NCBI GenBank assembly: GCA_950097015.1
Contig: CATNEN010000003.1
Location: 620,001-684,000 of the forward strand
Direction of reading: 5' to 3'
Length of the DNA stretch: 64,000 bases
Source: Macrostomum hystrix
Lineage: Eukaryota > Animalia > Platyhelminthes
Shown: positions 30,026 to 61,611 of the stretch, piece after piece
Position numbering within the stretch: position 1 is the stretch's first letter
Layout: each line of letters opens with the position of its first letter
Made by a program: the position numbers and the translations under genes
The notes under the pieces: generated by a model
The model's input: the letters and a program-made list of their open reading frames with translations, nothing else
Database searches by the model: none
What the model was told of the DNA's origin: nothing

Positions 30026-30979
<954 letters not shown>

Positions 30980-33228: not shown

Positions 33229-34857
33229 AGAATTATCAATATATAGTCCCGGCACTAAAATAATGTCTGCAATCGAATGGATTGGAAAAGTAATTGTGAG
33301 CGTAAATTGAGTTAAAAAGGCATTATTTACTATTGCACTATATGCACTGAAGTGGGACTTCCCTTCGTTAAAATGCTGGTAAGTATTATATCAACCATTT
33401 TTTTCAATGAACATCGCATTCGGCAGAACAACTTCCGAAATCCCCGAATTTTATAAAATCCCTAAACTTCAGTAGCCCCAAACTCATGAATTTTTGGGTA
33501 ATTAAAACGCCATGTAATTAGTGTTCCTTCCTGATGCAAAATCGTGTAATACATTTCTGAAATGTTTCTTCTCTTCGATACTGCCTTAATCGTTAAGTAG
33601 CCAAAGCAAATATCTGAGTTCAGCGCTTTTAAAGCACATAGTCCTGTTGACAAAATGCCGCGGATATTCCGCGGAATTTCCACTATCCATTCGCGAGTCC
33701 AAAACCGCCCCGCTCTGAGGCAAGCCTTGCTCCTCTTGTCTCCAACTGGGGACTTTTGCACACGATGGCGCCTCCACGGACTTTCCGTGGATTTCCAGCG
33801 GTTCGACCTGTTTGACTGCAGTTTTTCAGCACTCCTCGTGCATCAGTAATGTCATACCTGCGGCTTAGATATGCAGAATGACGAAGCAGGGACTTATTAT
33901 TCCTACATTTCAAGGGCGACCATGACGGGGACAGAGTAGCCTGTGCTGATTTTATTCCTGCGTCGCACATTGATCGAATAGATTTTGCCGCAGTTCTTAA
34001 TTCTTGTGGTTGCTCTAGACAATCATTCGAGTCAATCTATTAAGGAAATTCCGTGGCTTCGCCACCATGCATCCTGTGTCACTAAGGATTTCCATGGCGC
34101 ATCCAGGGAATTTCCGCGGTCTCGCTGTGGAATTCTCATGCAGATCATGCAGTTCGACTGCTCATTCTCTACCACATCAGCAGAAGCTGTCAGGCCTATA
34201 GCCCAGTCAATCAAGCCAATTTTCGAGATCGACCTCTGCAGCAAAGGACACTCAGCCAACTGCATCAACAAGCTGACAGGACATGAAGGTGAAATGGAAC
34301 TGACGCTGAACTCATTAAAATTCATGGTGTTAACTAGAGCAAGGCTACATGTAATCCAGTTACAGCTTAGTTTCTTGCGCAAATATTATAGGACATCTTA
34401 ATACTGATCTGATATCGGTTCCTGGTGTCACACATGCATGCAGACGTTAATAAGCGCATTAAAATGTGGCAGTAAAATCTAAAAATAATCTCGCGTGACC
34501 TCCAGCGTAGCACCTGAACATTTCCAGACAATAACGTACTCACAATTCAATGGGAATGCCCGTTGTGCTGTAACTGCAGACTCAGCTATGCTTTATAGAG
34601 CATCAGAAGTCTCGTACAAGCAGCCATTTACATGTACCAGTGCTCTCTTTGAGCACTTTATTGCTAAGAGTACTTGCACCGTTATTAATCTTTCTTATTT
34701 AACACATTATTGTTAAGCTCCGCATTTATCTGGTTAAAACATTGCAGTTTTCTAACCTCGGCCAGTCATTTTCTCTGCTGCTGCTGCTGGTAATGTTAAT
34801 TAATCTGTAAGCATCTTTGCTCTTCCTTTCACTTTCTGGTTACTGAGCACACCTTAG

Positions 34858-36981
34858 GTCCTCTTTAATCATTCGCTGTTTAAACTCGGGTTTCAGAGCA
34901 TCTGGTGGCACACACTTCTGCGACTGCAGCGGACATCAGAAAGTCTTTGACATTGCATATCGCACCGACGAAACCTTTCAGCCAAGGTGCTTCTTTCCGT
35001 CTGCCGCCACCGCCAATTCCTGCATGATTTCTACAGCTGGACTGACGTCCAACCACAGTCGGTTGCTGCTGCTGGCAGTTGTTGCAAATGACTCCGATAA
35101 AACCGTCCAGCAGATGAATTATTACATTCTGGAACATGAGTTCAACATTGTGCCAGGTCTGATGCATGCCGTGTGCCTGCTAAAGCTCAGGTGAGTTGCT
35201 GATTGCTGATGCCTGATAGGGTTAAACGACCAGTGTCATATGGTGAACTGAATGAGTTGGATTTCTTGCATTACAGAGGCAGCCCGATTTCGATCTCAGT
35301 GCAGCCGGTTGCCAGGGAAGCCAACGTCACCAGTCTCCCAGTCAGCCTCAGAGCAGCGCTCATCAAGCCTGGTTACTGCGCCAGAGACATGCTCAGTTTC
35401 CATGGCAACTGCTACGCCGTCAGCGCAGTTCACATGAGCAGCACAGACGCCTTGTCCAAAATCGGCGGCGATGCAGAACTGGCTCGCTTCGGCAGCATGT
35501 CCGAGATCAGTCAGCTCCTCGCTGCCAGTGAGTGCGTTCACTAGGGCTGCTAGACTAGGCTTGAGACGCAGCATGTAGTGGAATTTGCTGCTAGCTTCGA
35601 GTCTAATGTGCACCAGTAAGCCACAATGTCCAAATCCGCATTCCAGACGCAGCCAGGACAAAAAAGTATCCGTACAAGCAGCCGCTGAGCCTTGGCAAGC
35701 CAGTCCGCATCAACCTGCTCCTCCGCACAGCCGACGGCGCCCAGCTGTCCGCGTTTCGCAACGGCAGCCGCTGCGAGCTGCGACGCGTCGCCTCGCTAAG
35801 CCCAGACCAGTTCAGGTGAGAGAGTAGCGGCCGGTTGGTGTAATGTAGAGTGAGTAGTTTTCATCAAGACACCAATTTATGTTCTAGAGAAGTAGCCACA
35901 GAATATTACACAGAATGCTCAATCGAGCTCTCTGCTTGAAAATCGCTGTGCCAGAAAGATGCGCCATTAAGCCTACTATTGGGGTGAAGAAAAGTTAGTA
36001 GCATACTGCTATGAAACTCTAGGATCTGTGCCACATACGATTTTTCACAAGGCATTTTTTGTTCTTATTGTAGTCTGCAAGCATGACTGCAACTAACTGC
36101 GTATTTTCCTGTTTTTGCGTATCCTTATTCGTCGCATTCCTTTTACCGCTATAATAATGTCACTACCCAGTGTCAAGCGTCGTTTCATCGTACTTCATCT
36201 ATACATACTCGTATTTACAAGTTTGGATATTATGGGCCAATTTTCCAAAGCACTGTTCTAAAGTAGAACTATACCAGTAATACAACTTAAATAAACTTTT
36301 ATTGCACGTGCTTTCATTGACTTTAGGTTGTCTGTGGTTAGTACTACAGCTAGTAAAGTTAGTAATACGCTCGTAATCTGCACCCCAAGAGTAGGCTCAC
36401 GGCATTTAAACTCGCCCAGATAGTTTTCTCGTGATAGAGGATTATGTGTAATATTCTGTGGAAGTAGCAGGGACAAAATCTAGCTTCCGTGCTCTTTGCG
36501 TCGCTTCAGAGTGCTCGACGGAGTCCCAGGCGCAGTGCCAGGCGGAGTGCCAGCTCTGCTGTGTGCGTCTGTGCGAGTGCCCTCAGACTTGTTGAAGGCT
36601 AGCGAGCCGATGATCGACTTCGGTCGCTGCGACGCTCCAATGCAGTCGCTGGTGAGCTTTCCGGAGGCGGCCACCGAGGGCTCTCTTCTAGGCTTCGTCG
36701 AGCCGTGCGACATCAACCAAATGTCTGCTGTCCGAAGATCGACGATGCTGCCAAGTGAGGCGGCTGCAAAGCAGGGAGAAGCAAATCCTGGTCTTGGCTT
36801 GAGTGTTGTTGCTATTGCTGCTGCTGTTGCTGCTTTTACTGTTATTGTCGTGATTTTCGGCCCCTATTTTAGAGCGCGTAGCTCAAGAAATAGGGCTCAA
36901 GGCAATAGTGCTCAATCAGTTGAGCTTGATAGCCAAGCGGAGACCCAGCTAAGTGACCAGTCATCGGATTCACCTGTCTAA
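34858..36981 (+). CDS. Receptor gene A: single-pass membrane protein with a C-type-lectin-like domain; exons ~34858-35190, 35276-35527, 35648-35815, 36510-36981; 5' end uncertain
   Basis: In-frame GT-AG exons; CARDMLSFHGNCYAV...AELARFGSMSEISQL resembles a CTLD N-terminus; TM LSVVAIAAAVAAFTVIVVIFGPYF followed by RAR; exon-by-exon similarity to gene D. Confidence 0.7.
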
Positions 36982-39704: not shown

Positions 39705-42700
39705 ATGCGACGATATTCGCTGCTACTGCTGCTCCTGCCGAACCTTCAAGCTGAAGGCTACGTCAGCGGCTGCTTTGAAGGTCGCCGCTCAGGTAAATGC
39801 AGATAGGTGTACAGTGTGAGCTCCGCAATGTAAGGAAAAAATGGAAACAATTCGCACAGTTAAATCGATAACTTTGCGATTACAGTTGAGCTGAACAAAC
39901 AAATTGTGCGCACCTGGCAGCCGGACGGTGACTGCCAGCGGTGGCAGAATGGCCGGTCGGAGACAAACCGATTCCCAGCTGCTGTGCGGTCCGGGCCTCG
40001 GTGGCTTGTGATGCAGCTGAGGCAGCCGATGGTGCTGGATCGGGTGAGCGTGCGAGGCTGGGGTGAGTGACGCTGACCTTCATTTGTTCTCATGACCGAT
40101 GCTGAGACAGTCAGTCTGAGACAGTCAGTCTGAGACAGTCAGTCTGAGACAGTCAGTCTGAGAGCAGCAGCATGGCACTCGTGTTGCAGATGGCCAGTGG
40201 CAAGCAGCAGGTGCGGTCGGATCGCCCGTGTCGGCGGTCGGAGCCGCGAGCCTCCCGCTGGAGCTACAGATGGAGGATCCGTGCCGCGCCAGCTGGGAGG
40301 CCTTCAACAGCAGTGACCGCTGGAGGCAGCTCGGAGACCCAGGAGGAGTGAGACACTGGAGTGCTGATCAGTGTTTAGCTCATGAAAATAAAGTGGCATT
40401 GAAAATCTAATTTAAATTGCAGTCAGCGACATCGTTTCTTCTGATGAGCAGCACTAGGCCTCTGCAGTGGACGAGTGTCAGTGTGACAGGTAGAACATTC
40501 TTAGCTTTCGCAGCTCTGCCAGTGCGATAGTTCTCATCGTGAATTGAACTCAAACTTCAGGCCGAGCCGCTGCTCTGCAGTTTGCGTCGACAAGGTCCAC
40601 TTCGACAGGGCTTTGTGGAGATCTGGACTCAATGGAGTCTCGTGAATCTGCTGCGCACATTTGCTTCTCAGTTCTCAGCTGCCACCCGAGCCCGCAGCAG
40701 TCGAGCGTGAGCTGCAGCATAAGAGGGCCGGACGGCGAAGTCTCCACCGTATCTCAGGTGAGCTTTCTCGCTGAGCCGATCTAAAAATCATTTTTGCCTC
40801 AAAGTCCTCACAATGTAACCGCCGAAACTGCAGATGAAACAAAGCAAGTCGGGGCGACACGAGGAATATTTATTTGAGTTTGCTTCGAGCAGGAAGCTCC
40901 ATGGCTCAGTGCTCAGCTGTACTCAGGGTCCTCTGCAGGCCGACAGAGTTGAGCGAAGCCTTTCAGTGAGAAGTGAGTACTTTTCATCAGCTGATGAACT
41001 CGCAACATAGCCAGAATATTCACCTTTATTTGTGTCATTCATTCTCCAGTTCCAGCAAGGAGCTCTGTTATTTCAACATCCCCTGCTGTGTGGTTGCCGG
41101 GTCGCCCCGGTTTCGTGAGCATTGCCACCGTGGAATCTTTCCCGGAGCCGCGGCACCTCTGCTGGATCGGAGAACGGGACTCACAGACTCATGAAGCACC
41201 TGGGAGGGTCTATTTGAATGCGACATATTTAGTGAGGGGCAATTTTCTCCTATCTGCTGAATTTCTTTTAAATCAATATTCGCGCCCGATTTTTTCTTTT
41301 AGCATCGATCGATCGTCGCCTCTCACAATGGGCCAGTTTTCACGATGCGGTCGAATTTTAGCTTGATGGTTTCCATGGAGATGTCTAAGAAAACGATTTA
41401 TTGTAGAGAGTCGTCGGCTTTTAGCTCCGTATTGATGTCGCTCGACATTCCTGCAGTTAGCGGTAAGCCATGCCAGTGCTGAAGCTTAGCAAATCGTGAT
41501 AGTCACCAGTCAATAACTCACCTGATCGATAAACTAGTCACAGACGGCTACAAACTAGTCCGAGTGACGTCATCAAAGTGCAGCTACTGGAATGGGACTC
41601 ACAGCTCCAGGCTGAAGAATTCGGACACCCACAGCTCAGTACGTGTGCTCAATAAAACTCAGGTACCGACTTGCATTTTATGCATCTGTTGCACGAAAAC
41701 CTCAGGAAACGTTTGAGCATATTAAATTCCACATTAAAGCAGGAGAGCTTCAGCAGCGAGCACTGGCTGCCAGTGAGCCGATGGATGAGTCGGCGGAACT
41801 GGCTGTTGCGGTGTCAGCTCAACCAGATTGGCCTGGTGTACCCGGATGTGAAGTCGCATTCAGGGCAGCCGGAAGTTTTCTGTGAGTGAGCAGCTACGCA
41901 ATGGGTGTTACACGTGTGGAACTCAATAATAGAGGCAATGCGAACAACCCATTTCAGACAAGGGAGACCTGAAGATTGGGGAGCCCATGTGTAATGCGTC
42001 TCACATGAGTATTAAAGTCAGCATTACCGGTGGGAATCCAGTGTCTGTATCAAATGAGACCTGCAGTTTCACAGATACTCAAAGATTGAGATCGCAAGAG
42101 CTTGTAAGTATCCTGAAAGAAAAATTTTAGACTGTTACAAATCTATACTCAACCTCAAACATTGTACTCGTATTACATTCGCCATATTTTTAGAAATTTC
42201 ATAAACTAGCAAGTCACTGGGTGGCTGAGCTCCCATCGCCCAGGTCCCGGTCAGACAAAAGCTTCCATGCAGAAATCAAGTGCACTGCAAGTCAAACTCA
42301 CAACCACAAACCAATATTTAGCTTGCGCGCAAATGCAAATGTTTCGTGTATCCAAATGAATCCAAATGCAAAAGAAAATAGCAGAACTGATACTCAAAGC
42401 AAAGCTAGTGTTAAATTGATCGCCGTATTCAGCTTCGTCGTCGTGACCATTCTATTGCTTGTGATCATCGCTAAATACAAGTGCGCCCTAGTGGTCCATC
42501 GACACCTGCCACAAAGACAGCAGATTCCGCTGCAGCTCTGCAGAAGACCTGAGAATGCACTCACAGCAGTCTCTCCATCAAGTGAAGACTCGCCTTACGA
42601 CGAGCCGGGCTCGTTTACCGTCACTTCGACCGCTGACCCAGCTGTGAAACCACGGTCTGCAGCCTCTCCGTGCGAATGGCGAGCCCTTGCCAATCATCCA

Positions 42701-42886
42701 GACACTTCGGACGCGGCAGTCGCTTCGGATTCCCTGTACGATACGACAGATTCTCAATTGGACGTCCCAAGTGGCTTCCTTAGCGTACAGCTGGCTCAAC
42801 GTAATCATGGCTCAGAGCCACCCGCGCCTAGTGGAGGCCATACGTACATCAACTTGATGTCAAAGTGGAACAACTCAATGAAGTAG
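39705..42886 (+). CDS. Receptor gene B: signal peptide, discoidin/F5/8C-like domain, Ig-like domains, TM and Tyr-motif tail (multi-exon)
   Basis: Exon 1 39705-39792 MRRYSLLLLLLPNLQA; exon 2 39886-40062 PRWLVMQLRQPMVLDRVSVRGW; exon 3 40190-40347; Ig-like strands SRKLHGSVLSC and NWLLRCQLNQ; last exon ~42194-42886 with TM LIAVFSFVVVTILLLVIIA and tail motifs SPYDEP, SLYDTT, HTYINL. Confidence 0.75.
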
Positions 42887-42914
42887 GCTGATAGATAATG
42901 GATAAATGAAGCTA

Positions 42915-43979: not shown

Positions 43980-44729
43980 GTTGTCTCTCTATTGTTGACC
44001 GTCTGACGAAGATCTAAAGGTTTCACATTAATTGCCCTGGTATTTACAGTATACGATCATGTGGGCCAACCCCAAGGCACAGTAGTGAGATTTTAGACCA
44101 TCCGAAGGTAAAAAACTCAATTAAGGCAGTTGTACACACCTAAGTGGGTGTGTGCTCCGGGTGAGTGAAATGTGTTTCACTGTCGCTTCGCTTGCAGTTG
44201 ATCGACTGTACAGGGACCTTTCAGCCGTGTTTCCGTTCTGCTTCAGAGAGTTATGACTCATTTGGAAACGAAAAGATCGAATCTACAACAGCATTGTCTA
44301 CTGGTCTGGAAACCTCACATACAAACACCTCGTTCTATAAAAAAATGCTACATTTACAAAATTTGCTTACATTTTTTATTTCAATTTACTTAAAAGACGC
44401 TCGCGGCTTCAAGGTATTCTTGCTTCGCAGCAAATCTGACAGGTAAGAGTGGAGATACAGGCAAATGTTGACATGAGGTGCAGTGTTTCTCTACGTGCTT
44501 TCAAAACGTACTTTTATTTCGTGTAGACATCGATGTCTTTCATTCTACTGGCAAACCCCAGGGCCTTAAGTTGGCGTGCGATAAGTTTCACAGAACTACG
44601 AGAATATTTTTCCTAATATATAGCTTCATTAGTTTCCCTGAAATTAATCGCTAATTGAAGGTCGCAAGTCTGATCTTCAATTGCGAAAAGTAAAGCAATT
44701 TTTTAGACTACGCGTGCAAAAAAAGATCA

Positions 44730-46300
44730 ATCAATTGTCACTGATTTATTTCTGATCAGCTGCAAGAGAACCCAGTCAGTCTGCTGGTTTTCGGGTTCTG
44801 GAAGGAAAGAATACGTCAGCATGTGAGTCATTCTGTCTTGTAGATGCTCTTGTTGTAAAAAAGAAGCAATAAAAATTTCCATATATTTATCACGGAGAGT
44901 CTTTTCTCCGCACCAAAACCAAGTAACTGATGTACAGAACACATTTTAAATGTCTTTGTTCGCAAAGAGAACCGCCAAGTATTGCTGCAGTGCGGCTTTG
45001 ACAGAACAGGCCGAGTTCTGCTTGAGGAACTGCTGCACTCCTGTCATTTATTTCATTTCTTTTATAAAGGCACACTAGAGCATCGAAAAGTGTCTCCGTT
45101 TTTGGCTGTCGGATATGCTAGTGTGGTCAGGGTCTCGTCAGATTCACCTTTCGAGTCAACACACTGTTGTGTCTCTAGACCTCAAACTTCACTGAAAGTG
45201 AAGTAATTTGATATTGCAAGGTCGACTGGTGGAACCAGTTCAAGAGGGACAGTCGATACCCACGCCAAAGAAGTTAGCAAAAAGGGTGGCTACCCAGCAA
45301 TAATGTTTCTTAGGAAGTTTGCAGGATTCCGAACCGTCAAATTTAAGCAGCTAATGTTGTTCTGCACAGCCATGATAGAAAGCATAGTCCTGTATGCCTC
45401 AGAGGCCTGGGGAGTCTTTGTTTCCTGGAACTTGGGACCCTGGGATCGAGGCTTAATAAAGAGAATTAACTTCTTATTAACTTAATTGATAGAGGAACTG
45501 CAAGGCAATACTACAACTCAGTCAAAATACTGACAGCAGTGGGGCCCGATCAGAACTTTCACGGCTTTGACAGAACTGCTGCTGTTGTCAGGATTGTTGC
45601 GTCATGAAACTTTGCAAACTATTGCTCTGTAGATGATAGATCGATTGGATAAATGCTAATACGAGAGCAATACGATTTTAATGTTTTTATGAAGCTACAC
45701 TAAAGAATCGAAAAGTGCCTCCGTTTTGTGTCCCTAGATCTCAAACTTCACTGAAAGTACGAGCAAAGTTACGAGCATAGAACTAAATTTAAACTTTTAA
45801 TGAATGAGAGCAGAATTAGCAAAGTTGTGCGTCCATTTTTCTGTTCTTTTACCAGGATTAGACAACTATAATCGACGACTCGAATCGAACTCTTATCAGA
45901 GTTCATTCAGACCGTATTTTTATCACCGTCTCCCAGAACCATGAAAGCAGTGAAATCAACTGCTTCTTCGCCATATGTTCACCGCATTACGAAGTTGTTC
46001 ACCAGACAGCGAGTATCATGGATGTCACGGGTACGCTTGAGATGCATGCTGCGGTTTGATCATTTAGTTGTCTTTCTTGTTTTAAAATGCACCAAAAAGT
46101 CAGCGCGAAACCCCAAATTTACACGGTCAGAGCCGTGCCAAACGGATATAGATTTCGGAGGGCAAGATTTCTGGAGAGAATACGACGTCGGTTCAGTCCC
46201 GGAAGTCAACTCCAGCCGCTGTCGCTCTCGCAAGGTCACACACAGGTGCTGGCTAATTTACCTGACCGGGAATCGTTCGATGCAACTCACAAAGACTCAG
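44730..46300 (+). pseudogene. Decayed third paralog of receptor genes B/C
   Basis: Colinear peptides LISCKRTQSVCWFSGSG, LLQCGFDRTGRVLLEE, NRTLIRVHS..ESSEINC and EPCQTDIDF..WRE..VTHRCWL match gene C exons; no TM exon seen; LINE fragment inside. Confidence 0.65.
45230..45530 (+). mobile_element. LINE reverse-transcriptase C-terminal fragment
   Basis: MIESIVLYASEAWG matches the common post-RT LxY..E.W motif of non-LTR elements. Confidence 0.6.
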
Positions 46301-46397
46301 GTATTAACTCAAGAATTTAGAGGTAACGAGCTTGCGTGACTACGGGTTTCGATTTAAAGTAAAAAGCGCTACCTCTGGGGGTTGAGTTGTGGAGCAG

Positions 46398-48613: not shown

Positions 48614-51600
48614 ATGCGTCGAATATCTCTCCTGCTGCCGCTCCTGCTGCAGCTGTTGAGCTGGCAGACAGCAAGAGTGATGCTGCGCACGTGCTATAAC
48701 GTTAACAGAACAGGTAAGCTGCTAGTCCTCGCTTGAAATTTAAAGACTACTCCAACTGCATTTGACTAAGACACATTGCTTCTGCAGTGACAGGACAGCT
48801 TTATTCCTCCGACTTTCTTCGAACCTGGAACCCAAATGGAAATTGCCAAAGAATGAATGCCGACCTGGAGTTGGGCCCGTTTTTAGAGGAAGCCCTACAG
48901 AGCAGGCCTAAGTGGCTCGTCCTGCAACTGAGATTTCCGATGGAGCTGGATCAGTTGCACATTCAAAGCTGGGGTGAGAAAAAAATGTTTGGTTTGAAAT
49001 TTGGATTGAGACAGTCGGTCAGTCAGTCTGAGAGCAGCAGCATGGCACTCGTGTTGCAGATGGCAAGTGGCAGGCAGCAGGTGCGGTCGGCTCGCCCGTG
49101 TCGGCGGTCGGAGCCGCGAGCCTCCCGCTGGAGCTGCAGCTGGAGGATCCGTGCAATGCAAGCTGGGAGGCCTTCAGCAGCAGCCATCATTGGAGTCCGA
49201 TCGAAGGGACTCGAAATGCGGCTGCGGTGAGAGCTCAGACTGTCATCTAAATGATACGACGTATTTGAGTTTATATTTGATTGTTTCGTTGAATTGGATT
49301 TCTTGTAATGCGAGGATACATTCATTTCAGTGCCCTCTATCATTTATTCGCCTGAGCAGTCAGACCAGTTTGAGCTGGAAAGCCTTAAATTTTACTGGTT
49401 AGTCGATTATCAATGAATAGTTTTGGCTCCGCTCCACTCATGCTGATGTAGCTCATTTTTACATCACATTTCTACTTTAGTAGCGATACTATAATCTACC
49501 TTGTGATGAAATTTTCCAGGCAGACACAGTGTGATGTACCTAAGACGATTCTACGTCACACGGCCGCCGAATTCAACAGAGATGAGCATATCTGAAGAAT
49601 TGCAAATCGAGTTATCCGTGATTTCCTGCGCTGCAGCTCCTCCGGTGTGCTGGTTTTTACATTCAGGCACGAAGCTTTATGCAGATCATGTGAGTGTAGC
49701 GACTTTTAGCTGATATTCAACGCGTCTTCTAAAGTCTTAAGCGATTTTATGCCTGATTAGCGCTTATTTATCATTTTAGACTGGCAGCGACACTTACTTT
49801 TATCGTATTCCTGAGCACAAATTTCTGATAAAGGTTCACAAAGACGAATTCAAGGCGCTGTTGCAGTGCAGCCTCTCTAGACAAGGCCACACATTGCTGG
49901 AGGAGGTGCTTCTGTGGGGAGGTTGGTCACATAGTCCAATTGTCTCGTTTATAACTTGTTCAAATAAGTGCGTATACTTGTCATTAAATTTCAGAGGCAC
50001 CAAAGAATCTAGCCGTTTCAATCTCACCAGCTCTTGTCGTTGGTCATGCGGCGGTGATTAGTGTGTCATCTGAATCGCTTCCAGAGTCCAGGCATGCTTG
50101 TACATCGTTCTTTTCACATTTGCACGAAATCAATCATCACGAAACTATGAAAAGACACTTAAAGGAAATAATCCGGGTAATTAAAAATATTCAAAAGTTT
50201 GGCTGATTGACCTGAAATTGGGCCAGTACTTTAAAACTAGCTATTCCTAAGAAATCCGTTCAAATTTCACTCCCTTTTCTCTGACAGAGCCGATCCGTCA
50301 TTCTTAACCAAAGGAATAAAGCTCTAATCAGAGTCCAGTCATATTTCTTGTTCAATGTCTCTGAAGTCTACCGGAGCAGTGAAATTCGGTGCTATGCATA
50401 CATCATACATTCAACAACATTTCATTACAAAAAAAAAGTGCGAACGAGAATAAATATTTCAGCAGTCAGTGGTAAGCTTATACGGCCCTGCTACATTGAA
50501 AACTTGATTTTAAGGTTGTTAAAGATTAAACAGTTTTTGCTTCTTAAGAACCCAACCTTCTTCCCAACCTTGCAGAACCGTGCCAAACGGCCATCAACCT
50601 CGGCACCAGTCGCTTCTGGCGAGTCGGTGAGATCAAACGGATATCAGTTATCTCAAGTAACTGCAGCATCTGGAACGTCAGCCACAAGTGCCAGCTAGCT
50701 TTAGCTCAAGATAACTCGCTGGTGAATCTACGAATAGTTAAAGTGCGTTTAACTTGTGTACTAGTATGCCATATGAGCAGCGCCAATTTTATCAAAACGT
50801 GCTTTTTCGTGCCTATTCGGATTTCAGCGGGGTCCTTTCCACAGTACACACGAGCTGTTAGTGACTAGAGCGATGACCACTAGCAGCTGGAGGGTACACT
50901 GCAGCGTGAATCAATCTGGCATTGTGTATCAAGACTCGCTTAGCGATTCGAGCTGCGCCCCTATCATCTTTGGTTAGTAGCATCTTAACTAGCATATCTA
51001 CTTTTGTTGACACAGATTACTATGCCACTAAAACCGTGAAATTTGACCTGGCAGAGCCCTGCGTGACAAGCATCGAATTCGAGCAAAACAGGCTCTGGCG
51101 AGAAGGTGAGTTGAGATCAGTGCTACTTAAGTCTCTTGGGTGCAGTTCCGGGCCACCAGTTACGCACAACTGCCAGCTTGTGATCTACGGTTCACCAAAA
51201 AAATACAGTTTGGTGCAGCTAAAAATTAACCAGGTAGGGATTAAAATACGTAATATATGCTTTCGTATATTATATAGCTATTAAAAGCCTTCCAATCTAT
51301 CCAGCAAGGTAACTTTAGCAGCGAGCACCAGCTAGTAGCGAGCAGACTGATGGGCCAGCGGAACTGGCTGGTGCGGTGTCAGGTTAACCAGTCCGGCTTT
51401 GGGTACCCGGATGTGGTGGCGGTGTCAGCGGCTACTGTTTTATGTGCGTTTTTATTTTACTTTTGTTAAACACCTGTGGGTTAATTTAGGTATATTTTTT
51501 AAACACTGTACATTTTCCCTGCAGACAAAGCTGATTTGAAGCTTTTCCATCAACAAATCGGCGATTCCCATACTTGCATCGAGATCGACAGCTCGGACGC

Positions 51601-52852
51601 CTATCCGCCAGTTTCAGCATTGAGTTGCAGCGCTTTTTTTGGTATCAATGAATCTGTAGGTTCTGTATACAAGTGCTGTACTTTTATGGGTGTACTGTTA
51701 GTTGAATTTCACACCCAATACTCACACGCCTTGTAGGTGACGCAAGCAGTCACACGAAAAAGTTTTTTTCACTGGACGGTCAATGTGAGTCTGCAGCAGT
51801 CAGAGAACTGTTCTACTAATCTGCTTTGCTCTGCATTGCAGAGCCTGAATTCCGAGGTCATTTTCAGAGCAACCAAAGCATTTATTATAAATTCATCCAA
51901 CTTGCATCAGTCCGATGTGCGTGCAATTTCATGTGTCGCAAAGCTTCCAAAAGCAAAAAAAGATCTACCACAGCACGTCATGGTTCCGCTTGCTGTTTTT
52001 TTCGGTGCTTTGGTTCTTTGTATTTTCAGTGCTGCCATGGGCGCATGTGCCACGCTTTGGAAGATGTCGAGACCTTTGCCAGCGCAGCACGACACGGCCG
52101 GAATTCAGTTCCAGCGGCAGGTGTCATGTTCCGTTTCAAAGCAGAGAGATGAACCTAGAGTCGTACGCATCGCGCCCGCGACAAAAACATTTTTTCATCG
52201 CAGTGCTGAATCACCGAATGAACATCTCTATCCAGCAGCACCGCAAAATCTAAGCGAGGCTTTACGAGTGACAGCCCAGTCTCGTGATGATTCATCTCCG
52301 TATGAAGATACAGAGTACATGAACTCAACGTCACGCCCGGCAACATCGGTTGCACAAATTACAATCCAGTCTCGCGATGAGTCATCTCCGTATGAAGATA
52401 CAGAGTACATGAACTTAACGTCATGCCCGGCAACATCGGTTGCACAAATTACAATCCAGTCTCGCGATGAGTCATCTCCGAATGAGGATACAGAGTACAT
52501 GAACTTAACGTCATGCCCGGCAACATCGGTTGCACAAATTACAATCCAGTCTCGCGATGAGTCATCTCCGTATGAAGATACAGAGTACATGAACTTAACG
52601 TCCCGGCCGGAAATTTCTGTTGTACCAGTGACGGCCCAGTCTCACGATGAGTCATCTCCGAATGAGGATACAGAGTACATGAACTTATCGTCATACCCGG
52701 CAACATCGGTTGCACAAATTACAATCCAGTCTCGCGATGAGTCATCTCCGTTTGAAGATCCAGAGTACATAAACTCAACGTCACGCCTGGCAACTTCTGC
52801 TCTACCATTGACAGCCCATTCTCGCGATGAGGATGAGAACATCTCTGTATGA
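48614..52852 (+). CDS. Receptor gene C: paralog of B with an expanded Tyr-repeat tail (multi-exon)
   Basis: Exon 1 48614-48713 MRRISLLLPLLLQLLSWQTA; exon 2 48788-48973 PKWLVLQLRFPMELDQLHIQSW; exon 3 49060-49226; same intron phases as B; last exon 51737-52852 with TM VMVPLAVFFGALVLCIFSAAMGACATLW-KMSR. Confidence 0.8.
52276..52830 (+). repeat. Coding 90-bp (30-aa) tandem repeat, 6 full units plus a partial unit
   Basis: QSRDESSPYEDTEYMNLTSCPATSVAQITI units in the gene C tail. Confidence 0.95.
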
Positions 52853-56715: not shown

Positions 56716-59700
56716 ATGCACCCGAGAATTGTGATCCTTTTTTACCTGCTGTTTCCGTGAGTAACTTCAGTAACTTCAGCTCACTCAATTTTGAATTCTT
56801 AGCAGCATTTTTTATTAGGGTTTTTAATCAGCGTTTTTACTACAGAAAATGTGTTTTTTACAGCACTCATGCAGGTGACTACTTTTGCCAAAACGGAGTC
56901 ACGATAGTTGACGAGATCAGTAGCGAGTCTGGATTGTTCTACCACCGTGTAATTCCGCAGCTGGACATGAACTATTCAACAAAAGGACTTACATGCAATT
57001 GGGATTTTTACTTTAAGCTAAATCAGGATTCGGTTATAGTTATCAGCGGATTTAATATCGACAAAGCAGATCTGAGCCTCAAGCGCTATATCAGATCAGC
57101 TGAAGGACAGGCAGGTACAAGGATACCAACGATGAAATACTACTTGGGTCCACCATTTGATGGAGGTGAGCACGGTTTATTTTAATGGGCACGTTCAACT
57201 TATAAACTAGTACTAGCTTTTTTTGCCCGTTGTTTTTGGGGCAGAAATTTAAAGCAAAGCAGTAAGCAATTCACGTCTCTGTATTAACTTTATAGTGAAG
57301 GTCACCATTTATTTATTTACTGCATTAATGAAAAGTGAAGAGTTTGTTTAAGGGCGTTTTAAGTAAAAAATAAGTGAAAAGTTTGTCCAAACAGCCCCCT
57401 CTTGATTACTTCTTTAGAAACATGTCTCTTAGCCTCTATACAGTCAGTGGCAGATCCAGGAGTTTTGTTTTGGGGCGGTCTGTCAGGGGAGCGCCATGAG
57501 AATCACAGAGGGGGTGCCAGCGGCCGAAAAAGGGCGCCAGGAGCCAAGAAAGGGCGCCAGCGGCTGAAAAACGGGAGCCAGCGGCTGAAAAAGGGGCGCC
57601 AGCGGCCGAAAAGGGGCATCTTATTTCCATGATTAAAATTGAGGGGGGCGACTGCCCCCCCGCCCCTCCCCCCTAAATCTGCCTCTGTATACAGTATGCA
57701 TGTACACGCGTATACATAAGGAAAATAGCCACGTGGCATAACAATAACAATGTCAAAGAAACAAAATTAAACTGTTTCAGAGTTCAGAGTTAGACAGGTC
57801 AAGGTCAATTCGTGACTACTTTTCTATTAATTGCTTGCGAGTCACCTCAAGGCCTGGGGATACACCACATTCTTCGTTCTTCCCCTTGGTGCGAAAATGA
57901 ATAGGCCAGCTGGAGTTCCAACACGGGAGCAGGCGACATAAAGCTGCCCATGCGAGAAGCAAGGAGTCTCCAGGTTGATGCCAGCCACCTTCAGCGACTG
58001 TCCCTGAGCCTTGTTAATAGTCATCGCAAAGCACACTCTCACAGGGAACTGCAGTCGCTTGAACTGAAATGGCAGGTCCGTGGGGATAATTGGAATCCGG
58101 GGAATGAACACAGACTCTCCTCTGCCAGATCCAGTCATTATCGTGGCCTCAATCACGTGTGGGAAGAGCCGCCTGACTATCAGTCGGGTGCCGTTACACA
58201 GCCTTGGCGCATTCAGGTTGCGGAGGAGCATAATTGGTGCCCCAACTTTCAGCTGCAAGTTGTGCGATGGAGTTGCAGGAGGATCTAGAGAGTTCAGAAA
58301 CTCAACAGGATACTCCACAGCGGTGTCATCAGTCAACGTTGTATCAATTGACTTGTAGGTGAAAACTGCACCTGGCAACTCCTGAAGCAGTTGGTAGTTA
58401 ATTTCGTTGGCGGCATCATTTCTAGGACACAGAATTGCCCTCTCTGACAGCCAGTCAACGTCAGCATATCGAACCATCAGGTTCGGGTAAACTTTTGCCT
58501 TGAGCTCCTGCACTGACTGCACAATGGTTCCGATTGTAGCGATCGATGACTGCCCATCCTCGGTGCTAATCTCCAGCAGACCATTGCCGATTCGCAATAG
58601 ATTGGCAGAGAACTCATGAGCTGTTTCGTCTCCTTGAATTGTAGCTCTCATGTTTGTTCGTAGGTGCAACTTCACAACCGATGGCCACAGGTGAGATGAT
58701 TTTAGGCAAGCATTAATCTCATCAGCAGGAGTGCCACGCGGAATCACAGGCAGCGTCTGTCTAAAGTCTCCAGACAGCAGCAGAGTGACACCACCCATCA
58801 GTTGATCGCCAGCCTCTCTCTTTCTTCTATCCCAGGCTGGCTGGAGAGAAATATAGACCGGAGAGCCCTGCGCACTGGGACGCCACCGCACTCACCGCAC
58901 TCAGTCTCAGTGCTGCTTGGGGGCCAGTAGACAGTCTAGGGGTTTGGGCTGTGTACATTCACGTCTTAAAATACAATGTACAGTCTGGGGCTTCGGCGCC
59001 CGGGGAAGGGAGGGGGTGGCTGTAATAAAATTTGGCCCGCAGAGTGGCGGAGGGGAGTTGGGGTGGCTGTCCTCGGAAAACAAAAAGTGACTCACTTTGA
59101 GATGATGCAGCTTTGCTCTGGATTGAGTAGAGATGTTCAAAATTGACAGCATTGTTGGAAAACATGTAAAGTGTAAGTGGATCAAATTTGGAGAAAATCT
59201 GACAAAGTGGGGCGACGATATGTCGAATTGAGTGATTTTTTGACGATTTTTGAGCAGTTTTTTGCACTTTTGAGCAGGAAGGAAATGATTTTTCGGGAAT
59301 TTGAGTAGCCTATTGCACTCAGCGTAGGTGGTTTTAGGTATGTGCAAAGTTTGGTGCGATTTGGTTGAGCGGTTTCGGCGTCTATAAAGACAAAAGGTTG
59401 CACACACACAGACAGACACACACACACACAGACAGAGTTTTCACTTTTATATATATAGATAGTAGTGTTTTATTTGCCGATTGAACTCTATCCGGCCAAA
59501 TTTCATTTACAGACGCATGCAATCCAGTCGAAAGCCGCAAGTGGGAGTCGATAGAGCTGGAAACATTCCGCATTATGCCTCTTAAAAAAAGGTCAGCTAT
59601 CAACAGTGAAAGTGGATCATTTTCCGTCACCTTATAAATCGAGAACAATTCATAAGTATAGCATGAGAGAAACCATCAATTGCAGAAGTCATCTTTCGAT

Positions 59701-61611
59701 TACGTTCCAAATAGTCGAAGGAGACGAATATGACCCCAGGACAGCCGGGCTTGCCATGCAAGTGATGATTCAGGGACAGTGCAGCAGCGAGATTGTGAAC
59801 TTTAATCGCAACTGTTACACCAGCATCCAAGCAAAGAGGTCTCTAGAAAAAGAGCTGGCAGTGCTGAACAACGGAAGCAGATTTGCACAGCTGGCCAGCT
59901 TTAGCAGTGCCAGTGAGCTGCAGAACTTCGTTGAGCAAAGTATGTTTGCTTCAAACTACAAATAAAACATTTTTATCATAATTAGATTGAGTGCGTTTCA
60001 AATTTTGCGGTTATCTTCCGCTTTTAGGCCAGAAGAAAACAGTTGGAGCTGGTCTAGACACTCGCAGCCAACTCCTAATGAACTTGACTCATCCGTTGCG
60101 TATAGGACTGTTCTTTGACAACAATCCAAAAAAGATCTACTACCTGAGCAAAACAGAAAGTGTTTGCAAAATCAAAGAATTTCCGGACGCCGAAAGACTG
60201 TAAGTCTAACTAATGAAAAAATAATTGAGTGTTAGTCAAATTGAGTTCGAAAACTAGATAATTTAAGCTAGATGGAATGAACGCACGGAAAAAATAAAGC
60301 TACTTTGGCATCACTCCTACCTTCAAATATATGTTAAAGTGCCATTCGCAAGAACATCCAGGTACTATACAGCTAAAGTCTAAACGCAGCTAGAGAACTC
60401 TGAGTCTGAGTTCTTAGGACAGTGGAATCAGAATGTAAAAAATCGGCCAAATTGAACCATAAGCACTCTTACCTTACAGTTGCTGACATTTACTCGTACG
60501 AGGCGTTTGTGATATAGAGAAAAGGTAAATAACAATAATCTCAAACCCAGCTAACACTAGCGCACCCTTTCCCAATTTCGAGTTGGCCTGTGAGACAATT
60601 GCTAGAGCTGCAATATCAAACATCCCCTATTATGGTCAGAACATGCCCAAAGTCTCAAGTCGAAGTAGAGAACGAAATTCATATTCTTTTTGGTGCGATT
60701 ATTTGTTTTTATTATGGATGAAATGAAACAGAAAAGCACAGACAAGAACCGAAGAAATTCTTTCTGTCTATTCTTTCTATTCTGTATATTTTAAGTTGTC
60801 TCAATCGAACGAAGTCTGTCCTGAGACTTTTAATTTTTAATCCCTGTCTTCAACGCTTGGGTTTCAATATTCTGAATTTTAATACTCAGCTTTGGAATTA
60901 ACTCTTGATCTTTCGCCATTTTGCAAACCAACTTTATGAATACTTTTGGAGCAAAAACTTTTATTAAAACAAAAAAACCAGCAGTCGGTGCGTACTAATT
61001 AATTACAAGAGTTCTTATGCTGCCTACCCTATCACAACTGCAGTCTGCACACTGTCCGGCCATCGTCGAACAATACAGTCACCTGTGGCTCCGTTAGAAT
61101 TCGACATAGTGCCCACGTGTCCGTCCCTGTTGTGGAATTCGGAGACTGCAATGAGCCGCTGCCAACGATGATCAGCTTCCGGGACACCGCGAACAAAGAT
61201 CAGTGCAACAACTGCAGTCATGACCTGCTGAGCTGGCTGAAACTAACCTCGAGTTCAAAGTCGTTGCAAAAGAAGGTCCAAGACACAGATCCAACGCAAC
61301 AAGTCAATAACATTCCGATCTTGCTCATTGTATTAATCGTCTTGATATCTCTGGGCCTAGCTTTATTGTTCTTCATTGCCATCTGCATCCTCAAAAGAAC
61401 GAAAAATTGTCAGGATGCACGTAGAACCGATATAGGGAATGAATTGCCACTTACCACAGCCAATGCCAGCACCACCAGCGCCAGCATCACAGATGATGAA
61501 AATTCTTCAAATCAGTGTGGCGCACGGGCGTCGGGCGTCGTTGAAGTGAACTCCGGACATCTAGTAGTGCACAAGCCTTTAATGGATCAACGGATGCCTT
61601 TGCTCAATTGA
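56716..61611 (+). CDS. Receptor gene D: paralog of A (signal peptide, possible CUB-like region, CTLD-like domain, TM); exons 56716-56756, 56864-57165, 59513-59939, 60028-60199, 61044-61611; apparent frameshift at the A7 run 59584-59590
   Basis: Spliced N-terminus MHPRIVILFYLLFPTHAG-DYFC; CSSEIVNFNRNCYT...AQLASFSSASELQNF; TCGSVRI..VEFGDCNEPLPTMISF; TM IPILLIVLIVLISLGLALLFFIAICIL-KR. Confidence 0.7.
57445..57687. mobile_element. hAT-like MITE nested in the Helitron
   Basis: TIR CAG(T/A)GGCAGAT; perfect 8-bp TSD TATACAGT. Confidence 0.85.
57842..58810 (-). pseudogene. Helitron PIF1-family helicase, C-terminal portion only
   Basis: GDFRQTLPV, NMRA, LLRNLNAPRLCNGTRL, FAMTINKAQGQSL, FSHGQLYVACSRV; Walker A/B and Rep domain absent. 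Confidence 0.9.

What the first reader, a model, noticed from the sequence alone, without database searches (positions are those of the whole stretch)
34750..61611. Same-strand cluster of divergent type I membrane receptors (CTLD-like pair flanking Ig-like, Tyr-tailed paralogs): candidate immune/allorecognition locus
Seen: five loci on the + strand in ~27 kb (A, B, a decayed copy, C, D). B, C and D have spliced signal peptides; A-D have Cys-containing ectodomains and one TM. Intron phases are conserved within each family although the proteins have diverged strongly. Known: clustered, fast-evolving single-pass Ig or lectin receptors with Tyr tails characterise recognition loci such as the Hydractinia Alr complex and vertebrate NK/leukocyte receptor complexes. 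Inference: this is an analogous, possibly undescribed, recognition locus in a likely flatworm.
Basis: partly seen in the sequence, partly recalled or inferred. Interest (0 to 1): 0.85.

Follow-up and report, generated by a model that had tools for sequence, protein, structure and literature searches.

The report
Flatworm surface-receptor gene cluster, two families
A free-living flatworm (Macrostomum hystrix) carries side by side four working genes and one wreck from two genus-specific families of cell-surface receptors, one with a CUB-like plus C-type-lectin-like outside, the other with a head that its 14 copies keep almost letter-identical by copying from each other; it is a real, undescribed receptor cluster, but nothing shows that it serves immunity or self-recognition.

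Summary
On the + strand of this Macrostomum hystrix window lie four intact genes and one remnant, from two genus-restricted families of type I membrane proteins.

- **A (34748-36981) and D (56716-61611):** signal peptide, CUB-like domain, C-type-lectin-like domain, TM, short Tyr-free tail. D starts 2.9 kb upstream of its lectin exon and has a Helitron fragment in an intron. A fold model of their M. lignano homologue matches CLEC5A/CLEC-2 at Z 13.8.
- **B (12 exons) and C (14 exons):** signal peptide, ~150-aa head, two-exon modules, TM, tails with SPY(D/E)(D/E) and YxN motifs (six repeats in C).
- **X:** a decayed middle piece of a B/C-type gene.

A, and the first six exons of B, are transcribed and spliced as modelled. 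The head is only weakly discoidin/F-lectin-like.

New here: a 430-bp cassette (head exons 2-3 plus an intron with a minisatellite) is about 80-100% identical in 14 paralogues that are otherwise 30-60% identical, all within 1 Mb. Gene conversion homogenises the head; it does not diversify it. Nothing specifically supports an immune or allorecognition role.

The scan had already met the CUB/lectin family and similar conversion cassettes elsewhere in this genome.

The parts
34748..34806 (+). Gene A exon 1: hydrophobic leader (FSNLGQSFSLLLLLVMLIN), no ATG of its own. It starts at an AG acceptor, in frame.
   Evidence: In one search the loose end before 34897 reads the last 30 letters of this exon. 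Frame analysis. SL-donated ATG is an inference.
34897..35190 (+). Gene A exon 2: start of the CUB-like domain (THFCDCSGHQKVFDIAYRTDETFQP...). The frame is open from the first base.
   Evidence: GT..AG joint 35190/35277 in 4 runs. Frame. The motif matches family N-termini.
35277..35527 (+). [quoted passage not shown]
   Evidence: Joints. 18 database relatives. 26 paralogous exons in the genome.
35647..35815 (+). Gene A exon 4: middle of the lectin-like domain (PVRINLLL...).
   Evidence: Joints. 15 paralogous exons.
36510..36981 (+). Gene A exon 5: end of the lectin-like domain (MIDFGRCDAPMQSLVSF), TM at 36790-36870, Tyr-motif-free tail, stop codon. The transcript runs on to at least 37371.
39705..42886 (+). 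Gene B, 12 coding exons: 39705-39792, 39886-40062, 40190-40347, 40423-40489, 40561-40757, 40834-40972, 41050-41231, 41303-41462, 41544-41662, 41740-41881, 41958-42103, 42194-42886. TM at 42410-42472. Tail motifs: SPYDEP 42590-42607, SLYDTT 42731-42748, HTYINL 42839-42856.
   Evidence: Model. RNA joints for introns 2-4 and the exon 5/6 junction. Motifs. Whole-gene paralogues L072 and L073 are 80-98% identical.
39903..40336 (+). Conserved head cassette of B: most of exon 2, the whole of intron 2, and most of exon 3. It is shared at about 80-100% DNA identity (over 90% outside the variable-length minisatellite) with paralogues that are otherwise unalignable.
   Evidence: blastn. 14 genomic copies at 97-100% over 160 nt. 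pS 0.025/0.079. Transcript contigs of paralogues break away exactly at 39899/39903 and 40336.
40102..40163 (+). 14-nt minisatellite (CTGAGACAGTCAGT, 4.4 copies) inside intron 2 of B. Copy number differs between paralogues, up to about 40.
44533..46303 (+). X: decayed partial B/C-type copy, with pieces like C exons 4, 5, 6, 7 and 9/11. It has lost donors and has no head, TM or tail.
48614..52852 (+). Gene C, 14 coding exons: 48614-48713, 48788-48973, 49060-49226, 49331-49397, 49520-49689, 49780-49921, 49995-50176, 50288-50471, 50576-50742, 50828-50972, 51016-51233, 51305-51443, 51525-51655, 51737-52852. Exons 9+10 and 11+12 are an internal duplication. TM at 51977-52060.
   Evidence: Model. Internal duplication. 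TM. No RNA check was possible.
52276..52794 (+). Six 90-nt (30-aa) tail repeats of C. Each carries SP(Y/N/F)ED(T/P)EY(M/I)N(L/S), that is a YxN motif that also reads TxYxxL.
56716..56756 (+). Gene D exon 1: ATG plus short signal peptide (MHPRIVILFYLLF), phase 2.
   Evidence: Model only.
56864..57165 (+). Gene D exon 2: CUB-like domain (AGDYFCQNGVTIVDE...LTCNWDFYF...VIVISGFNID).
   Evidence: The motif matches family proteins P0002/P0018.
57842..58891 (-). Pif1-type helicase ORF fragment (Helitron-like) inside intron 2 of D.
   Evidence: Pfam PF21530 at 1.3e-18 and PF05970 at 3.4e-17.
59607..59939 (+). Gene D exon 3: end of the CUB-like part plus the first half of the lectin-like domain (GQCSSEIVNFNRNCYTS...AQLASFSSASEL).
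60028..60199 (+). Gene D exon 4: middle of the lectin-like domain (PLRIGLFF...).
61044..61611 (+). Gene D exon 5: end of the lectin-like domain (VVEFGDCNEPLPTMISF), TM at 61312-61392, Tyr-free tail, stop codon.

Best explanation
The region is a small outpost of a roughly 1-Mb receptor-gene district on one Macrostomum hystrix contig. It holds members of two unrelated families of type I membrane proteins, both known only from the genus.

**Family 1 (A, D).** Signal peptide, CUB-like jelly roll, compact C-type-lectin-like domain without the Ca2+/sugar motifs, one TM helix, and a short serine-rich tail without tyrosine motifs.

**Family 2 (B, C, remnant X).** Signal peptide, then a head of about 150 aa on exons 1-4 (probably a discoidin/F-lectin-type sandwich; weak evidence). 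Next come three or four modules, each split over two exons (Ig-like by cysteine/tryptophan pattern only). Then one TM helix and a tail with acidic SPY(D/E)(D/E) and YxN motifs. The tail module occurs once in B and six times in C.

**Shown:**
- the anatomy of all five loci;
- splicing and expression of A and of the 5' half of B;
- the CTLD fold of family 1, via its M. lignano homologue;
- the restriction of both families to Macrostomum in the databases searched;
- gene conversion of the family 2 head cassette.

**Inferred:**
- Both families are ligand-binding surface proteins.
- Family 2 signals when tail tyrosines are phosphorylated and recruit SH2 adaptors of the Grb2 (pYxN) type.
- Because the head is kept the same in 14 genes while stalks, TM segments and tails differ, the family presents one binding specificity on many different signalling or spacing chassis.
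- Family 1, with an NK-receptor-like CTLD lacking sugar-site residues, more likely binds protein than sugar.

The biological process served (defence, mating, tissue interaction) is unknown.
For: **Organism.** G000 has 220,453,370 bases in 42 contigs. This equals the M. hystrix assembly in Table 1 of PMC10468722.

**Gene models.**. RNA joints for A and B.

**Family 1**
- Only M. lignano proteins are found among 1.84 billion representatives and 5.8 billion proteins. None has a Pfam hit.
- The AlphaFold model of P0021, built with a 70-row alignment that includes the A and D exons, has pLDDT 76 and pTM 0.68.
- Residues 158-310 match CLEC5A and CLEC-2 at Z 13.8, rmsd 2.4-2.5 A, over 116-117 of 118-120 residues. 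All 50 top rows are CTLDs. Foldseek gives probability 1.0 and TM 0.6-0.73.
- The N-terminal domain matches spermadhesin CUB (Foldseek TM 0.63; VIA Z 6.8). CUB domains of neuropilin, meteorin, TSG-6, Kremen, Neto2, MASP and cubilin fill the list.
- A and D align to the family over all lectin exons.

**Family 2**
- 14 copies of exon 2 at 97-100% DNA identity, all on contig C3 between 0.66 and 1.65 Mb. C is a 15th, divergent member.
- blastn similarity between B and nine paralogues is confined to 39857-40337.
- Stalk exons of the same genes are 29-64% identical in protein.
- pS is 0.025 (exon 2) and 0.079 (exon 3).
- An M. lignano fragment (P0019) keeps exon 3 at 81% identity.
- Tail motifs.
- The head exon resembles F5/8-type-C and F-type-lectin clusters in language-model feature space (score 0.92, all ten best hits in one clan).
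Against: - The fold evidence for family 1 comes from a homologue that is 20-48% identical to A and D, not from A or D themselves.
- The CUB match is middling (Z 6.8).
- The family 2 head has no Pfam hit. None of the 150 F-type-lectin hits in the genome lies in the family's loci. Profile-profile comparison with the genome's own F-type lectin domains is insignificant (probability 0.3%). The language-model hit is of a strength that shuffled sequences reach 4-10 times in 100.
- The stalk has no support beyond residue patterns.
- C and D have no RNA evidence. B's exon 1 to exon 2 junction and its exons 7-12 are modelled, not seen in RNA.
- A's start codon is unresolved.
- SH2 recruitment is inferred from motifs alone.
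- Many paralogues seem to have short tails without such motifs (crude ORF scan).
Confidence: 0.68

Rival explanations
1. One reading: an immune or allorecognition locus. On this view the clustered receptors evolve fast to tell pathogens or conspecific tissue apart, like the Hydractinia Alr complex or vertebrate NK/leukocyte receptor complexes.
For: - Clustered, lineage-restricted, duplicated single-pass receptors with a lectin-like domain or tyrosine-motif tails.
- The CTLD of family 1 is structurally nearest to NK-type and myeloid receptors such as CLEC5A, CLEC-2, NKp80 and Ly49.
- Gene conversion and pseudogene remnants are usual in such complexes (own knowledge).
- There is a small patch of amino-acid variation just after the head's cysteine: codons 8-29 of the cassette hold 8 of 9 replacement-variable codons.
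Against: - The head of family 2 is homogenised, not diversified. pN/pS is 0.83 and 0.56, both below 1.
- There are no data on allelic polymorphism. Four transcriptomes show no variant in A, but they probably come from one inbred line.
- No ITIM is present. The YxN motif points to Grb2-type adaptors, which are not immune-specific.
- Structural nearness to NK receptors reflects a compact CTLD, not kinship (11-21% identity).
- The animal is solitary, and allorecognition is not known in it (own knowledge).
Confidence: 0.12
2. Reproductive recognition proteins. On this view both families act at sperm, egg or the female tract of this hermaphrodite, where genus-restricted, quickly changing gene families are common.
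For: - Genus restriction, tandem expansion, strong divergence of most domains.
- CUB domains (spermadhesins, the top structural match for the N-terminal domain) and lectin-like domains are frequent in gamete-recognition proteins (own knowledge).
- The published M. hystrix annotation was built around reproduction-related expression (PMC10468722).
Against: - No expression site is known for any of these genes.
- The spermadhesin match is only the generic CUB fold.
- Nothing in the sequences is gamete-specific.
Confidence: 0.12
3. The two families are functionally coupled, as ligand and receptor or as co-receptors in cis. That coupling would be why they stay interleaved in the genome.
For: - The families lie together twice: A-B and C-D here, and about 12 family 2 genes and 20 family 1 genes interleaved, locally on the same strand, at C3 1.10-1.65 Mb.
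- Family 1 has no signalling motif, while family 2 has.
- A decayed family 1 exon sits 0.9 kb upstream of a family 2 gene (L067).
Against:
- Co-location can come from segmental duplication of a mixed block. Paired near-identical paralogues on opposite arms suggest this.
- No binding test was possible, because the head cannot be given as one chain.
Confidence: 0.07
4. Mostly non-functional DNA: recently duplicated, decaying gene copies without a present role.
For: - One clear remnant (X) lies in the window.
- A transposon fragment sits in D's intron.
- The surroundings are rich in satellites.
- pN/pS is close to 1 in cassette exon 2.
Against: - Four long open, correctly phased multi-exon frames (755, 1037, 471 and about 416 codons) survive with all GT..AG borders.
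- A and B are transcribed and spliced.
- Head exon 3 is kept at 81% identity in another species.
Confidence: 0.03

Closest known systems
NK-cell and myeloid C-type-lectin-like receptors (CLEC5A, CLEC-2, NKp80, Ly49, CD69, KLRG1) of the vertebrate NK gene complex
   Same: - The family 1 lectin-like domain superposes on them best (Z 12.8-13.8, rmsd 2.4-2.8 A).
- Like them, it lacks the EPN/QPD and WND sugar/Ca2+ motifs (read from the alignment).
- The genes are clustered and duplicated.
   Different: - Those receptors are type II proteins with the CTLD at the C-terminal end and no CUB domain. Here the protein is type I, with a signal peptide and an N-terminal CUB-like domain.
- Sequence identity is 11-21%.
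- The canonical C1-C4 disulfide is absent.
- No ITIM and no charged TM residue.
CUB + C-type lectin domain proteins of invertebrates (for example many Caenorhabditis elegans CLEC proteins; own knowledge, not tested here)
   Same: The same two domain kinds sit in one polypeptide, in large lineage-specific expansions.
   Different: - Those are mostly secreted and are recognised by the Pfam CUB and Lectin_C models.
- Family 1 is membrane-anchored and matches neither model.
- No detectable sequence relationship.
Lectin-headed Ig receptor clusters noted earlier in this same genome (F-type-lectin head + Ig stalk + TM + tyrosine tail; AI notes s1-332671, s1-306091 and others)
   Same: - Overall design of family 2: head, repeated stalk modules, TM, tyrosine-motif tail.
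- Tandem clusters, restriction to the genus, remnants among intact copies.
   Different: - Family 2 is not hit by the F-type lectin model that finds at least 150 exons elsewhere in the genome.
- Its head is split over four exons, whereas the genome's true F-type lectin domains are single-exon.
- Its stalk exons match only its own 15 members.
Neuropilins and DCBLD1/2 (CUB + discoidin + TM; DCBLD tails carry repeated tyrosine motifs that bind SH2 adaptors; own knowledge)
   Same: The same tool-kit: a CUB domain, a discoidin-type domain (if the head reading is right), a single TM, and repeated phosphotyrosine docking motifs.
   Different: - Here CUB and the putative discoidin-like head are on different proteins of different families.
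- The tail motif is YxN, not YxxP.
- No LCCL or MAM domain, and no sequence similarity.
Gene-conversion islands in multigene receptor families (KIR/LILR, MHC; own knowledge) and in other gene families of this genome (AI notes s1-842799, s1-840543)
   Same: A short tract, intron included, is kept near-identical among old paralogues. Its edges fall inside exons, not at exon borders.
   Different: In the immune families, conversion mostly shuffles variation into binding sites. Here it keeps the presumed binding head uniform across subfamilies, while stalks and tails diverge.

Membership tests
C-type lectin-like domain (CTLD) superfamily: A, D | CTLD fold (two helices, two sheets, double loop) | tested here: met
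   Model of family member P0021, from an alignment that includes the A and D exons: Z 13.8, rmsd 2.4 A, 116 of 118 residues of CLEC5A. All 50 top rows are CTLDs. Foldseek probability 1.0. Tested on the homologue, not on A or D themselves.
C-type lectin-like domain (CTLD) superfamily: A, D | Match to the Pfam Lectin_C model (PF00059) | tested here: not met
   No hit for the A or D exons at E<=1, nor for nine family proteins at E<=0.01, nor for P0021 at E<=0.1.
C-type lectin-like domain (CTLD) superfamily: A, D | Conserved cysteines C1-C4 (helix 1 to last strand) and C2-C3 | tested here: inconclusive
   Read from the alignment and the models.
- The N-terminal pair (GYC...GNCY) is present.
- The pair at strand 3 and after strand 4 (LLCASV...FGRCD in A; VTCGSV...FGDCN in D) is present.
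- Helix 1 (SKIGGD) and the last strand (SLVSF) have no cysteine, so C1-C4 is missing.
Pairing was not checked in the model.
Sugar-binding C-type lectins (CRD) | EPN or QPD plus WND Ca2+/carbohydrate motifs | tested here: not met
   The family has FG(D/R)C where WND stands, and no conserved EPN/QPD (alignment; exon translations).
CUB domain: A, D N-terminal part | CUB jelly-roll fold | tested here: inconclusive
   Best matches are CUB domains: spermadhesin (Foldseek TM 0.63, E 1e-3; VIA Z 6.8, rmsd 3.4, 85 of 109 residues), with about half of the top 34 rows being CUB domains. However, Z is below 8 and that model was of a truncated isoform.
CUB domain: A, D N-terminal part | Match to the Pfam CUB model (PF00431) | tested here: not met
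   UniProt's automatic name 'CUB domain-containing' on 4 of 16 M. lignano relatives is a lead only. Other names in the same list are plainly spurious.
Immunoglobulin superfamily: B, C stalk | Match to an Ig-type Pfam model or to solved Ig domains by sequence | tested here: not met
   Ten C exons gave no Ig family at E<=10. Profiles of two stalk exon types matched nothing relevant in PDB sequences. The language-model search was blank. Each exon is only half a domain, so the test is weak.
Immunoglobulin superfamily: B, C stalk | Ig beta-sandwich fold | not testable with these tools
   Each module is split over two exons and joined sequences were not to be used. No database protein of this family long enough to fold was found.
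F5/8 type C (discoidin) / F-type lectin: B, C head | Match to PF00754 or PF22633 | tested here: not met
   No hit for the head exons at E<=1. None of the 150 PF22633 matches in the genome lies in the window or at C3 1.1-1.65 Mb.
F5/8 type C (discoidin) / F-type lectin: B, C head | Profile similarity to bona fide domains, or the same fold | tested here: inconclusive
   - hhalign of the exon 2 profile against 17 F-type lectin domains of the same genome: probability 0.3%, though in the expected register. Exon 3: nothing.
- Language-model features of exon 2: best ten named clusters are all of this clan, score 0.92 (weak).
- The fold was not testable without joining exons.
ITIM/ITSM immune receptors | (S/I/V/L)xYxx(I/V/L) or TxYxx(V/I) in the tail | tested here: inconclusive
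   B has none (HTYINL, SLYDTT, SPYDEP). C's repeats read TEYMNL (TxYxxL), which is ITSM-like only if L is allowed, and every one is also YxN.
Allorecognition complexes (Hydractinia Alr, Botryllus fuhc/fester) | Extreme allelic polymorphism of the binding domain and a fusion/rejection phenotype | not testable with these tools
   There is one assembly and four runs of one study. Between paralogues the head is the most uniform part, which does not speak for diversification.

The most novel reading that the evidence does not exclude
The two interleaved families form one recognition system. The head of the B/C-type receptors, kept uniform by gene conversion, binds the diverse CUB/lectin-like proteins encoded next to them (or the reverse). 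On this reading, one invariant 'reader' mounted on many signalling chassis scans a variable set of neighbours. The system could serve self/partner or gamete discrimination in a self-fertilising, hypodermically inseminating hermaphrodite.
Probability: 0.06. Interest if true: 0.8.

Novelty: new variant of a known kind. Interest (0 to 1): 0.45.

Why it matters
Flatworms have no described families of clustered surface receptors comparable to vertebrate NK or leukocyte receptor complexes. This locus gives two concrete, expressed candidates in a tractable genus, since RNAi and transgenesis exist for M. lignano.

- **Family 1** shows that a compact, NK-receptor-like CTLD can sit on a type I chain behind a CUB-like domain. 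It is invisible to Pfam, so standard annotation misses about 26-60 genes.
- **Family 2** is a clean natural example of domain-specific concerted evolution. A 430-bp tract around a minisatellite-bearing intron is held nearly identical in 14 genes whose other parts have diverged to 30-60% protein identity. This separates 'what is bound' from 'how the signal is passed on'.

It is a useful system for studying conversion tracts and receptor modularity. It does not open a new category, and the immune reading remains a guess.

Tried and rejected
**Searches that found nothing**
- Pfam on all long ORFs and on single exons: no domain.
- The search for homologous proteins with C's head exon: no candidate. 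With B's exon 3: one 93-aa M. lignano fragment, too short to fold.
- Exon 2 profile against PDB sequences: chance hits only. Stalk exon profiles against PDB: chance hits.
- Language-model search with C's membrane-proximal piece: blank.
- Rfam and tRNA scans of the window: nothing.
- Papers: nothing on these families or on the M. lignano gene ids. The C-type lectin domain in Macrostomum adhesive protein ap1 is a different, secreted protein.

**Tests that did not support an idea**
- First fold model of family 1, with a shallow 15-row alignment: pLDDT 56 and no Foldseek match. It was superseded by the 70-row model.
- hhalign of head exons 2 and 3 against the genome's own F-type lectin domains: insignificant.
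- hhalign of head exon 2 against family 1, to test whether the head derives from the CUB-like domain: nothing.
- Positive selection on the head cassette: pN/pS is 0.83 and 0.56, so not supported.

**Explained away**
- The in-frame TGA reported in all paralogues of exon 2 is the conserved donor G|GTGAGTGA read through. It is not a recoded stop.

**Not available or not done**
- Complex prediction was not used. I make no binding claim that it could test, and the B/C head cannot be given as one chain.
All searches were exon by exon, by reference.

Full report
**Organism and setting.** The window is contig C3:620001-684000 of a 220,453,370-base, 42-contig assembly. These are exactly the figures given for Macrostomum hystrix in Table 1 of Wiberg et al. 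2023 (PMC10468722). Earlier notes of this scan had also called the genome 'Macrostomum-type'. The first 30 kb of the window are mostly minisatellite arrays. The receptor genes start after a single-exon GOLPH3 gene.

**Gene A (34748-36981).** Contigs of four public runs skip GT..AG introns, so the runs are transcriptomes. They lie on A and define introns 35191-35276, 35528-35646 and 35816-36509. They also show a further 5' exon whose last 30 letters are those ending at 34806, joined to 34897.
- Exon 2 is open in frame from its first base and starts with THFCDCSGHQKVFDIAYRTDETFQP. This is the N-terminal motif of the family (HYC..G.......D.F.HRDET.IP).
- Exon 1 reads FSNLGQSFSLLLLLVMLIN in the matching phase. 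It has no ATG upstream of this leader and begins right after an AG.
- The 35-nt spliced leader of M. lignano ends in ATG (PMC8629364). Its last 21 bases plus the GT donor occur 20 times exactly in this genome, against none for the reversed control. A leader-donated start codon (M-FSNLG...) is therefore a reasonable inference. One contig carries 155 letters upstream of the junction, more than leader plus exon 1, so an upstream exon or unspliced precursor cannot be excluded. The start is unresolved.
- The rest of A encodes the end of the CUB-like part, the lectin-like domain on three exons, a TM helix (36790-36870) and a 35-residue tail without tyrosine motifs.

**Gene D (56716-61611).**
- The matching exon is 56864-57165 (AGDYFCQNGVTIVDE...LTCNWDFYF...VIVISGFNID). 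It encodes the same CUB-like N-terminus as in family proteins P0002 and P0018.
- It is preceded by a 41-nt ATG/signal-peptide exon (56716-56756). All borders are GT..AG and the phases fit.
- The 2.4-kb intron between 57165 and 59607 holds a Pif1-helicase (Helitron-type) ORF fragment on the minus strand.
- A and D are only about 29% identical where alignable. They share the phases of three introns; the intron within the CUB-like part differs.

**What family 1 is.** A's exon 3 finds 18 proteins among 1.84 billion representatives. A profile finds 16 among 5.8 billion. Every true hit is from Macrostomum lignano, and none carries a Pfam domain.
- In the genome the exon has at least 26 relatives, all on C3, at 1.10-1.45 Mb and 5.04-5.09 Mb.
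- A first model from a shallow alignment failed.
- I then aligned 25 database proteins with the A and D exons and 37 paralogous exons of the genome, each by reference. This gave a model of the full-length member P0021 with pLDDT 76 and pTM 0.68.
- Residues 158-310 superpose on CLEC5A and CLEC-2 at Z 13.8 (rmsd 2.4-2.5 A, 116-117 of 118-120 residues). All 50 best of 48,161 chains are CTLDs. Foldseek agrees.
- The N-terminal domain matches CUB domains: spermadhesin TM 0.63 and Z 6.8, with many other CUB domains in the list. That support is moderate, not strong.
- The domain has the N-terminal cysteine pair and the strand 3/post-strand 4 pair. It lacks the helix 1/last-strand pair and the EPN/QPD and WND motifs. 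It is therefore a CTLD, not a demonstrable lectin.

**Genes B and C.** RNA joints fix B's introns 2-4 and the frame of exon 3, which the three-frame DNA conservation had left open. A contig of run X3 gives the exon 5-6 junction and covers exon 1. The remaining exons follow from GT..AG sites, phase and similarity to C and to two close paralogues.
- B has 12 exons (755 aa) and C has 14 (1037 aa). C's exons 9+10 and 11+12 are an internal duplication.
- Intron phases agree throughout.
- Both tails carry an acidic SPY(D/E)(D/E) motif followed by a YxN motif. It occurs once in B (SPYDEP ... HTYINL) and six times in C's 30-residue repeats (SPYEDTEYMNL). This agrees with note s1-840665. pYxN is the consensus of Grb2-type SH2 domains (own knowledge).
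- A and D have no such motifs.
- X (44.5-46.3 kb) keeps only pieces like exons 4-7 and 9/11, with lost donors.

**Folds of family 2.** This is the weak point. I was bound to work exon by exon, and the joined step was left out. No database protein long enough to fold exists: there is only one 93-aa M. lignano fragment.
- Head exons have no Pfam hit.
- The F-type lectin model, which finds at least 150 exons in this genome, finds none in this family.
- hhalign against 17 of those domains is insignificant, though in the expected register (PRWLVMQL on WWQAK, LDRVSV on ITSVTI).
- Language-model features of exon 2 point to F5/8-type-C and F-type-lectin clusters (0.92, ten of ten in one clan). That evidence is weak by the tool's own calibration.
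- For the stalk I have only residue patterns (C...W...C per two-exon module). All searches were blank.
- 'Ig-like' is thus neither supported nor refuted.

**The head cassette.** This is the most definite new result.
- B's stretch 39903-40336 begins 17 nt inside exon 2, spans all of intron 2 with its 14-nt minisatellite, and ends 11 nt before the end of exon 3.
- It is the only part of B that blastn can align to nine paralogues, at about 80-99.6% identity (above 90% outside the variable-length minisatellite).
- The first 160 nt occur 14 times in the genome at 97-100% identity, all on C3 between 0.66 and 1.65 Mb.
- The same genes fall into subfamilies whose stalk exons are 29-64% identical in protein. 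Only L072 and L073 are close to B over their whole length.
- Synonymous difference in the cassette is 0.025 (exon 2) and 0.079 (exon 3), with pN/pS of 0.83 and 0.56.
- Transcript contigs of paralogues leave B's sequence exactly at 39899/39903 and at 40336.
- C has escaped in exon 2 (44% aa identity). It shares exon 3 and the last 60 nt of the intron at 87% DNA identity.
- Edges inside exons, a conserved intron and near-zero synonymous change are the signature of gene conversion. Protein-level selection alone would not produce them. That an M. lignano fragment keeps exon 3 at 81% shows the head is also constrained between species.
- The scan noted similar conversion islands in other families of this genome (s1-842799, s1-840543), so the process is common here.

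**Genomic association.** In the window the order is A, B, X, C, D. One more family 2 gene lies on the minus strand 16-19 kb beyond the window's end, and nothing related lies in the 20 kb before the window. At 1.10-1.65 Mb, about 12 family 2 and 20 family 1 genes are interleaved, locally co-oriented. Family 1 also clusters alone at 5.04-5.09 Mb. The association is real. It may reflect only duplication of mixed blocks.

**Reading.** Both families are best read as ligand-binding surface proteins. Family 2 signals through phosphotyrosine docking and presents one conserved head on varied chassis. Family 1 has a protein-binding-type CTLD and no signalling motif. Immune, allorecognition or reproductive roles are all open, and none is favoured by the data. 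The uniform head argues against a diversifying recognition locus of the Alr or KIR kind.

No paper in the library describes either family.

Noticed in passing
window 1057-1855, 4743-5929, 6350-6963, 7787-9519, 11126-11808, 12983-13565, 21073-22019: The first 22 kb hold at least seven unrelated minisatellite arrays (units of 24-94 nt, up to 53 copies). This explains the extreme GC skew there and the long repetitive ORFs.
   Followed up: partly
window 30044-30979 (+) and 30982-31436: An intronless Golgi phosphoprotein 3 (GPP34) gene (Pfam 2.5e-47). It is followed at once by a 41-nt tandem repeat of 11 copies at 99% identity.
   Followed up: partly
window 54244-54440 and 55573-55818: Two arrays of a 15-nt unit in opposite orientation (CGACAACTGCCTGCG and its reverse complement) flank about 1.1 kb of AT-rich DNA between C and D. 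This is a foldback-like structure.
   Followed up: no
window 37518-38436: Between A and B, short transcript contigs lie at only 95-99% identity, with loose ends on both sides. They are probably transcripts of a dispersed repeat, not of this locus.
   Followed up: no
L067:561-724 (G000:C3:1364760-1364923, +): A decayed family 1 CUB-like exon (VNGLTLSINLDDFYSSDEVIVP..., with a stop) sits 0.9 kb upstream of, and on the same strand as, the head exon of a family 2 gene.
   Followed up: partly
L072:1747-2424 (G000:C3:1102447-1103124, -) compared with window 42194-42886: B's closest paralogue has an 80% identical last exon, but its TM segment and the stretch before it are replaced by unrelated sequence. 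The tail with SPYDEP, SLYDTT and HTYIN is kept.
   Followed up: no
G000 contigs C15, C17, C42 (for example C17:2763-120872): The 3' end of the spliced-leader sequence plus its GT donor recurs every 11.6-11.7 kb (mostly) in tandem arrays. The SL RNA genes therefore sit inside a long tandem repeat unit.
   Followed up: no
window 22252-23621 (-): Two overlapping ORFs (265 and 221 aa) without a Pfam match, next to a 64-nt satellite. Possibly a transposase remnant.
   Followed up: partly
UniProt names of M. lignano relatives (P0004, P0011, P0015, P0024, P0025, P0028, P0029): Automatic names of these family 1 proteins ('PilZ', 'VASt', 'MHD', 'ZP', 'Vitellogenin', 'WIF', 'Fibrillar collagen NC1' domain-containing) contradict each other and have no Pfam support. 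Such names in this proteome should not be trusted.
   Followed up: partly
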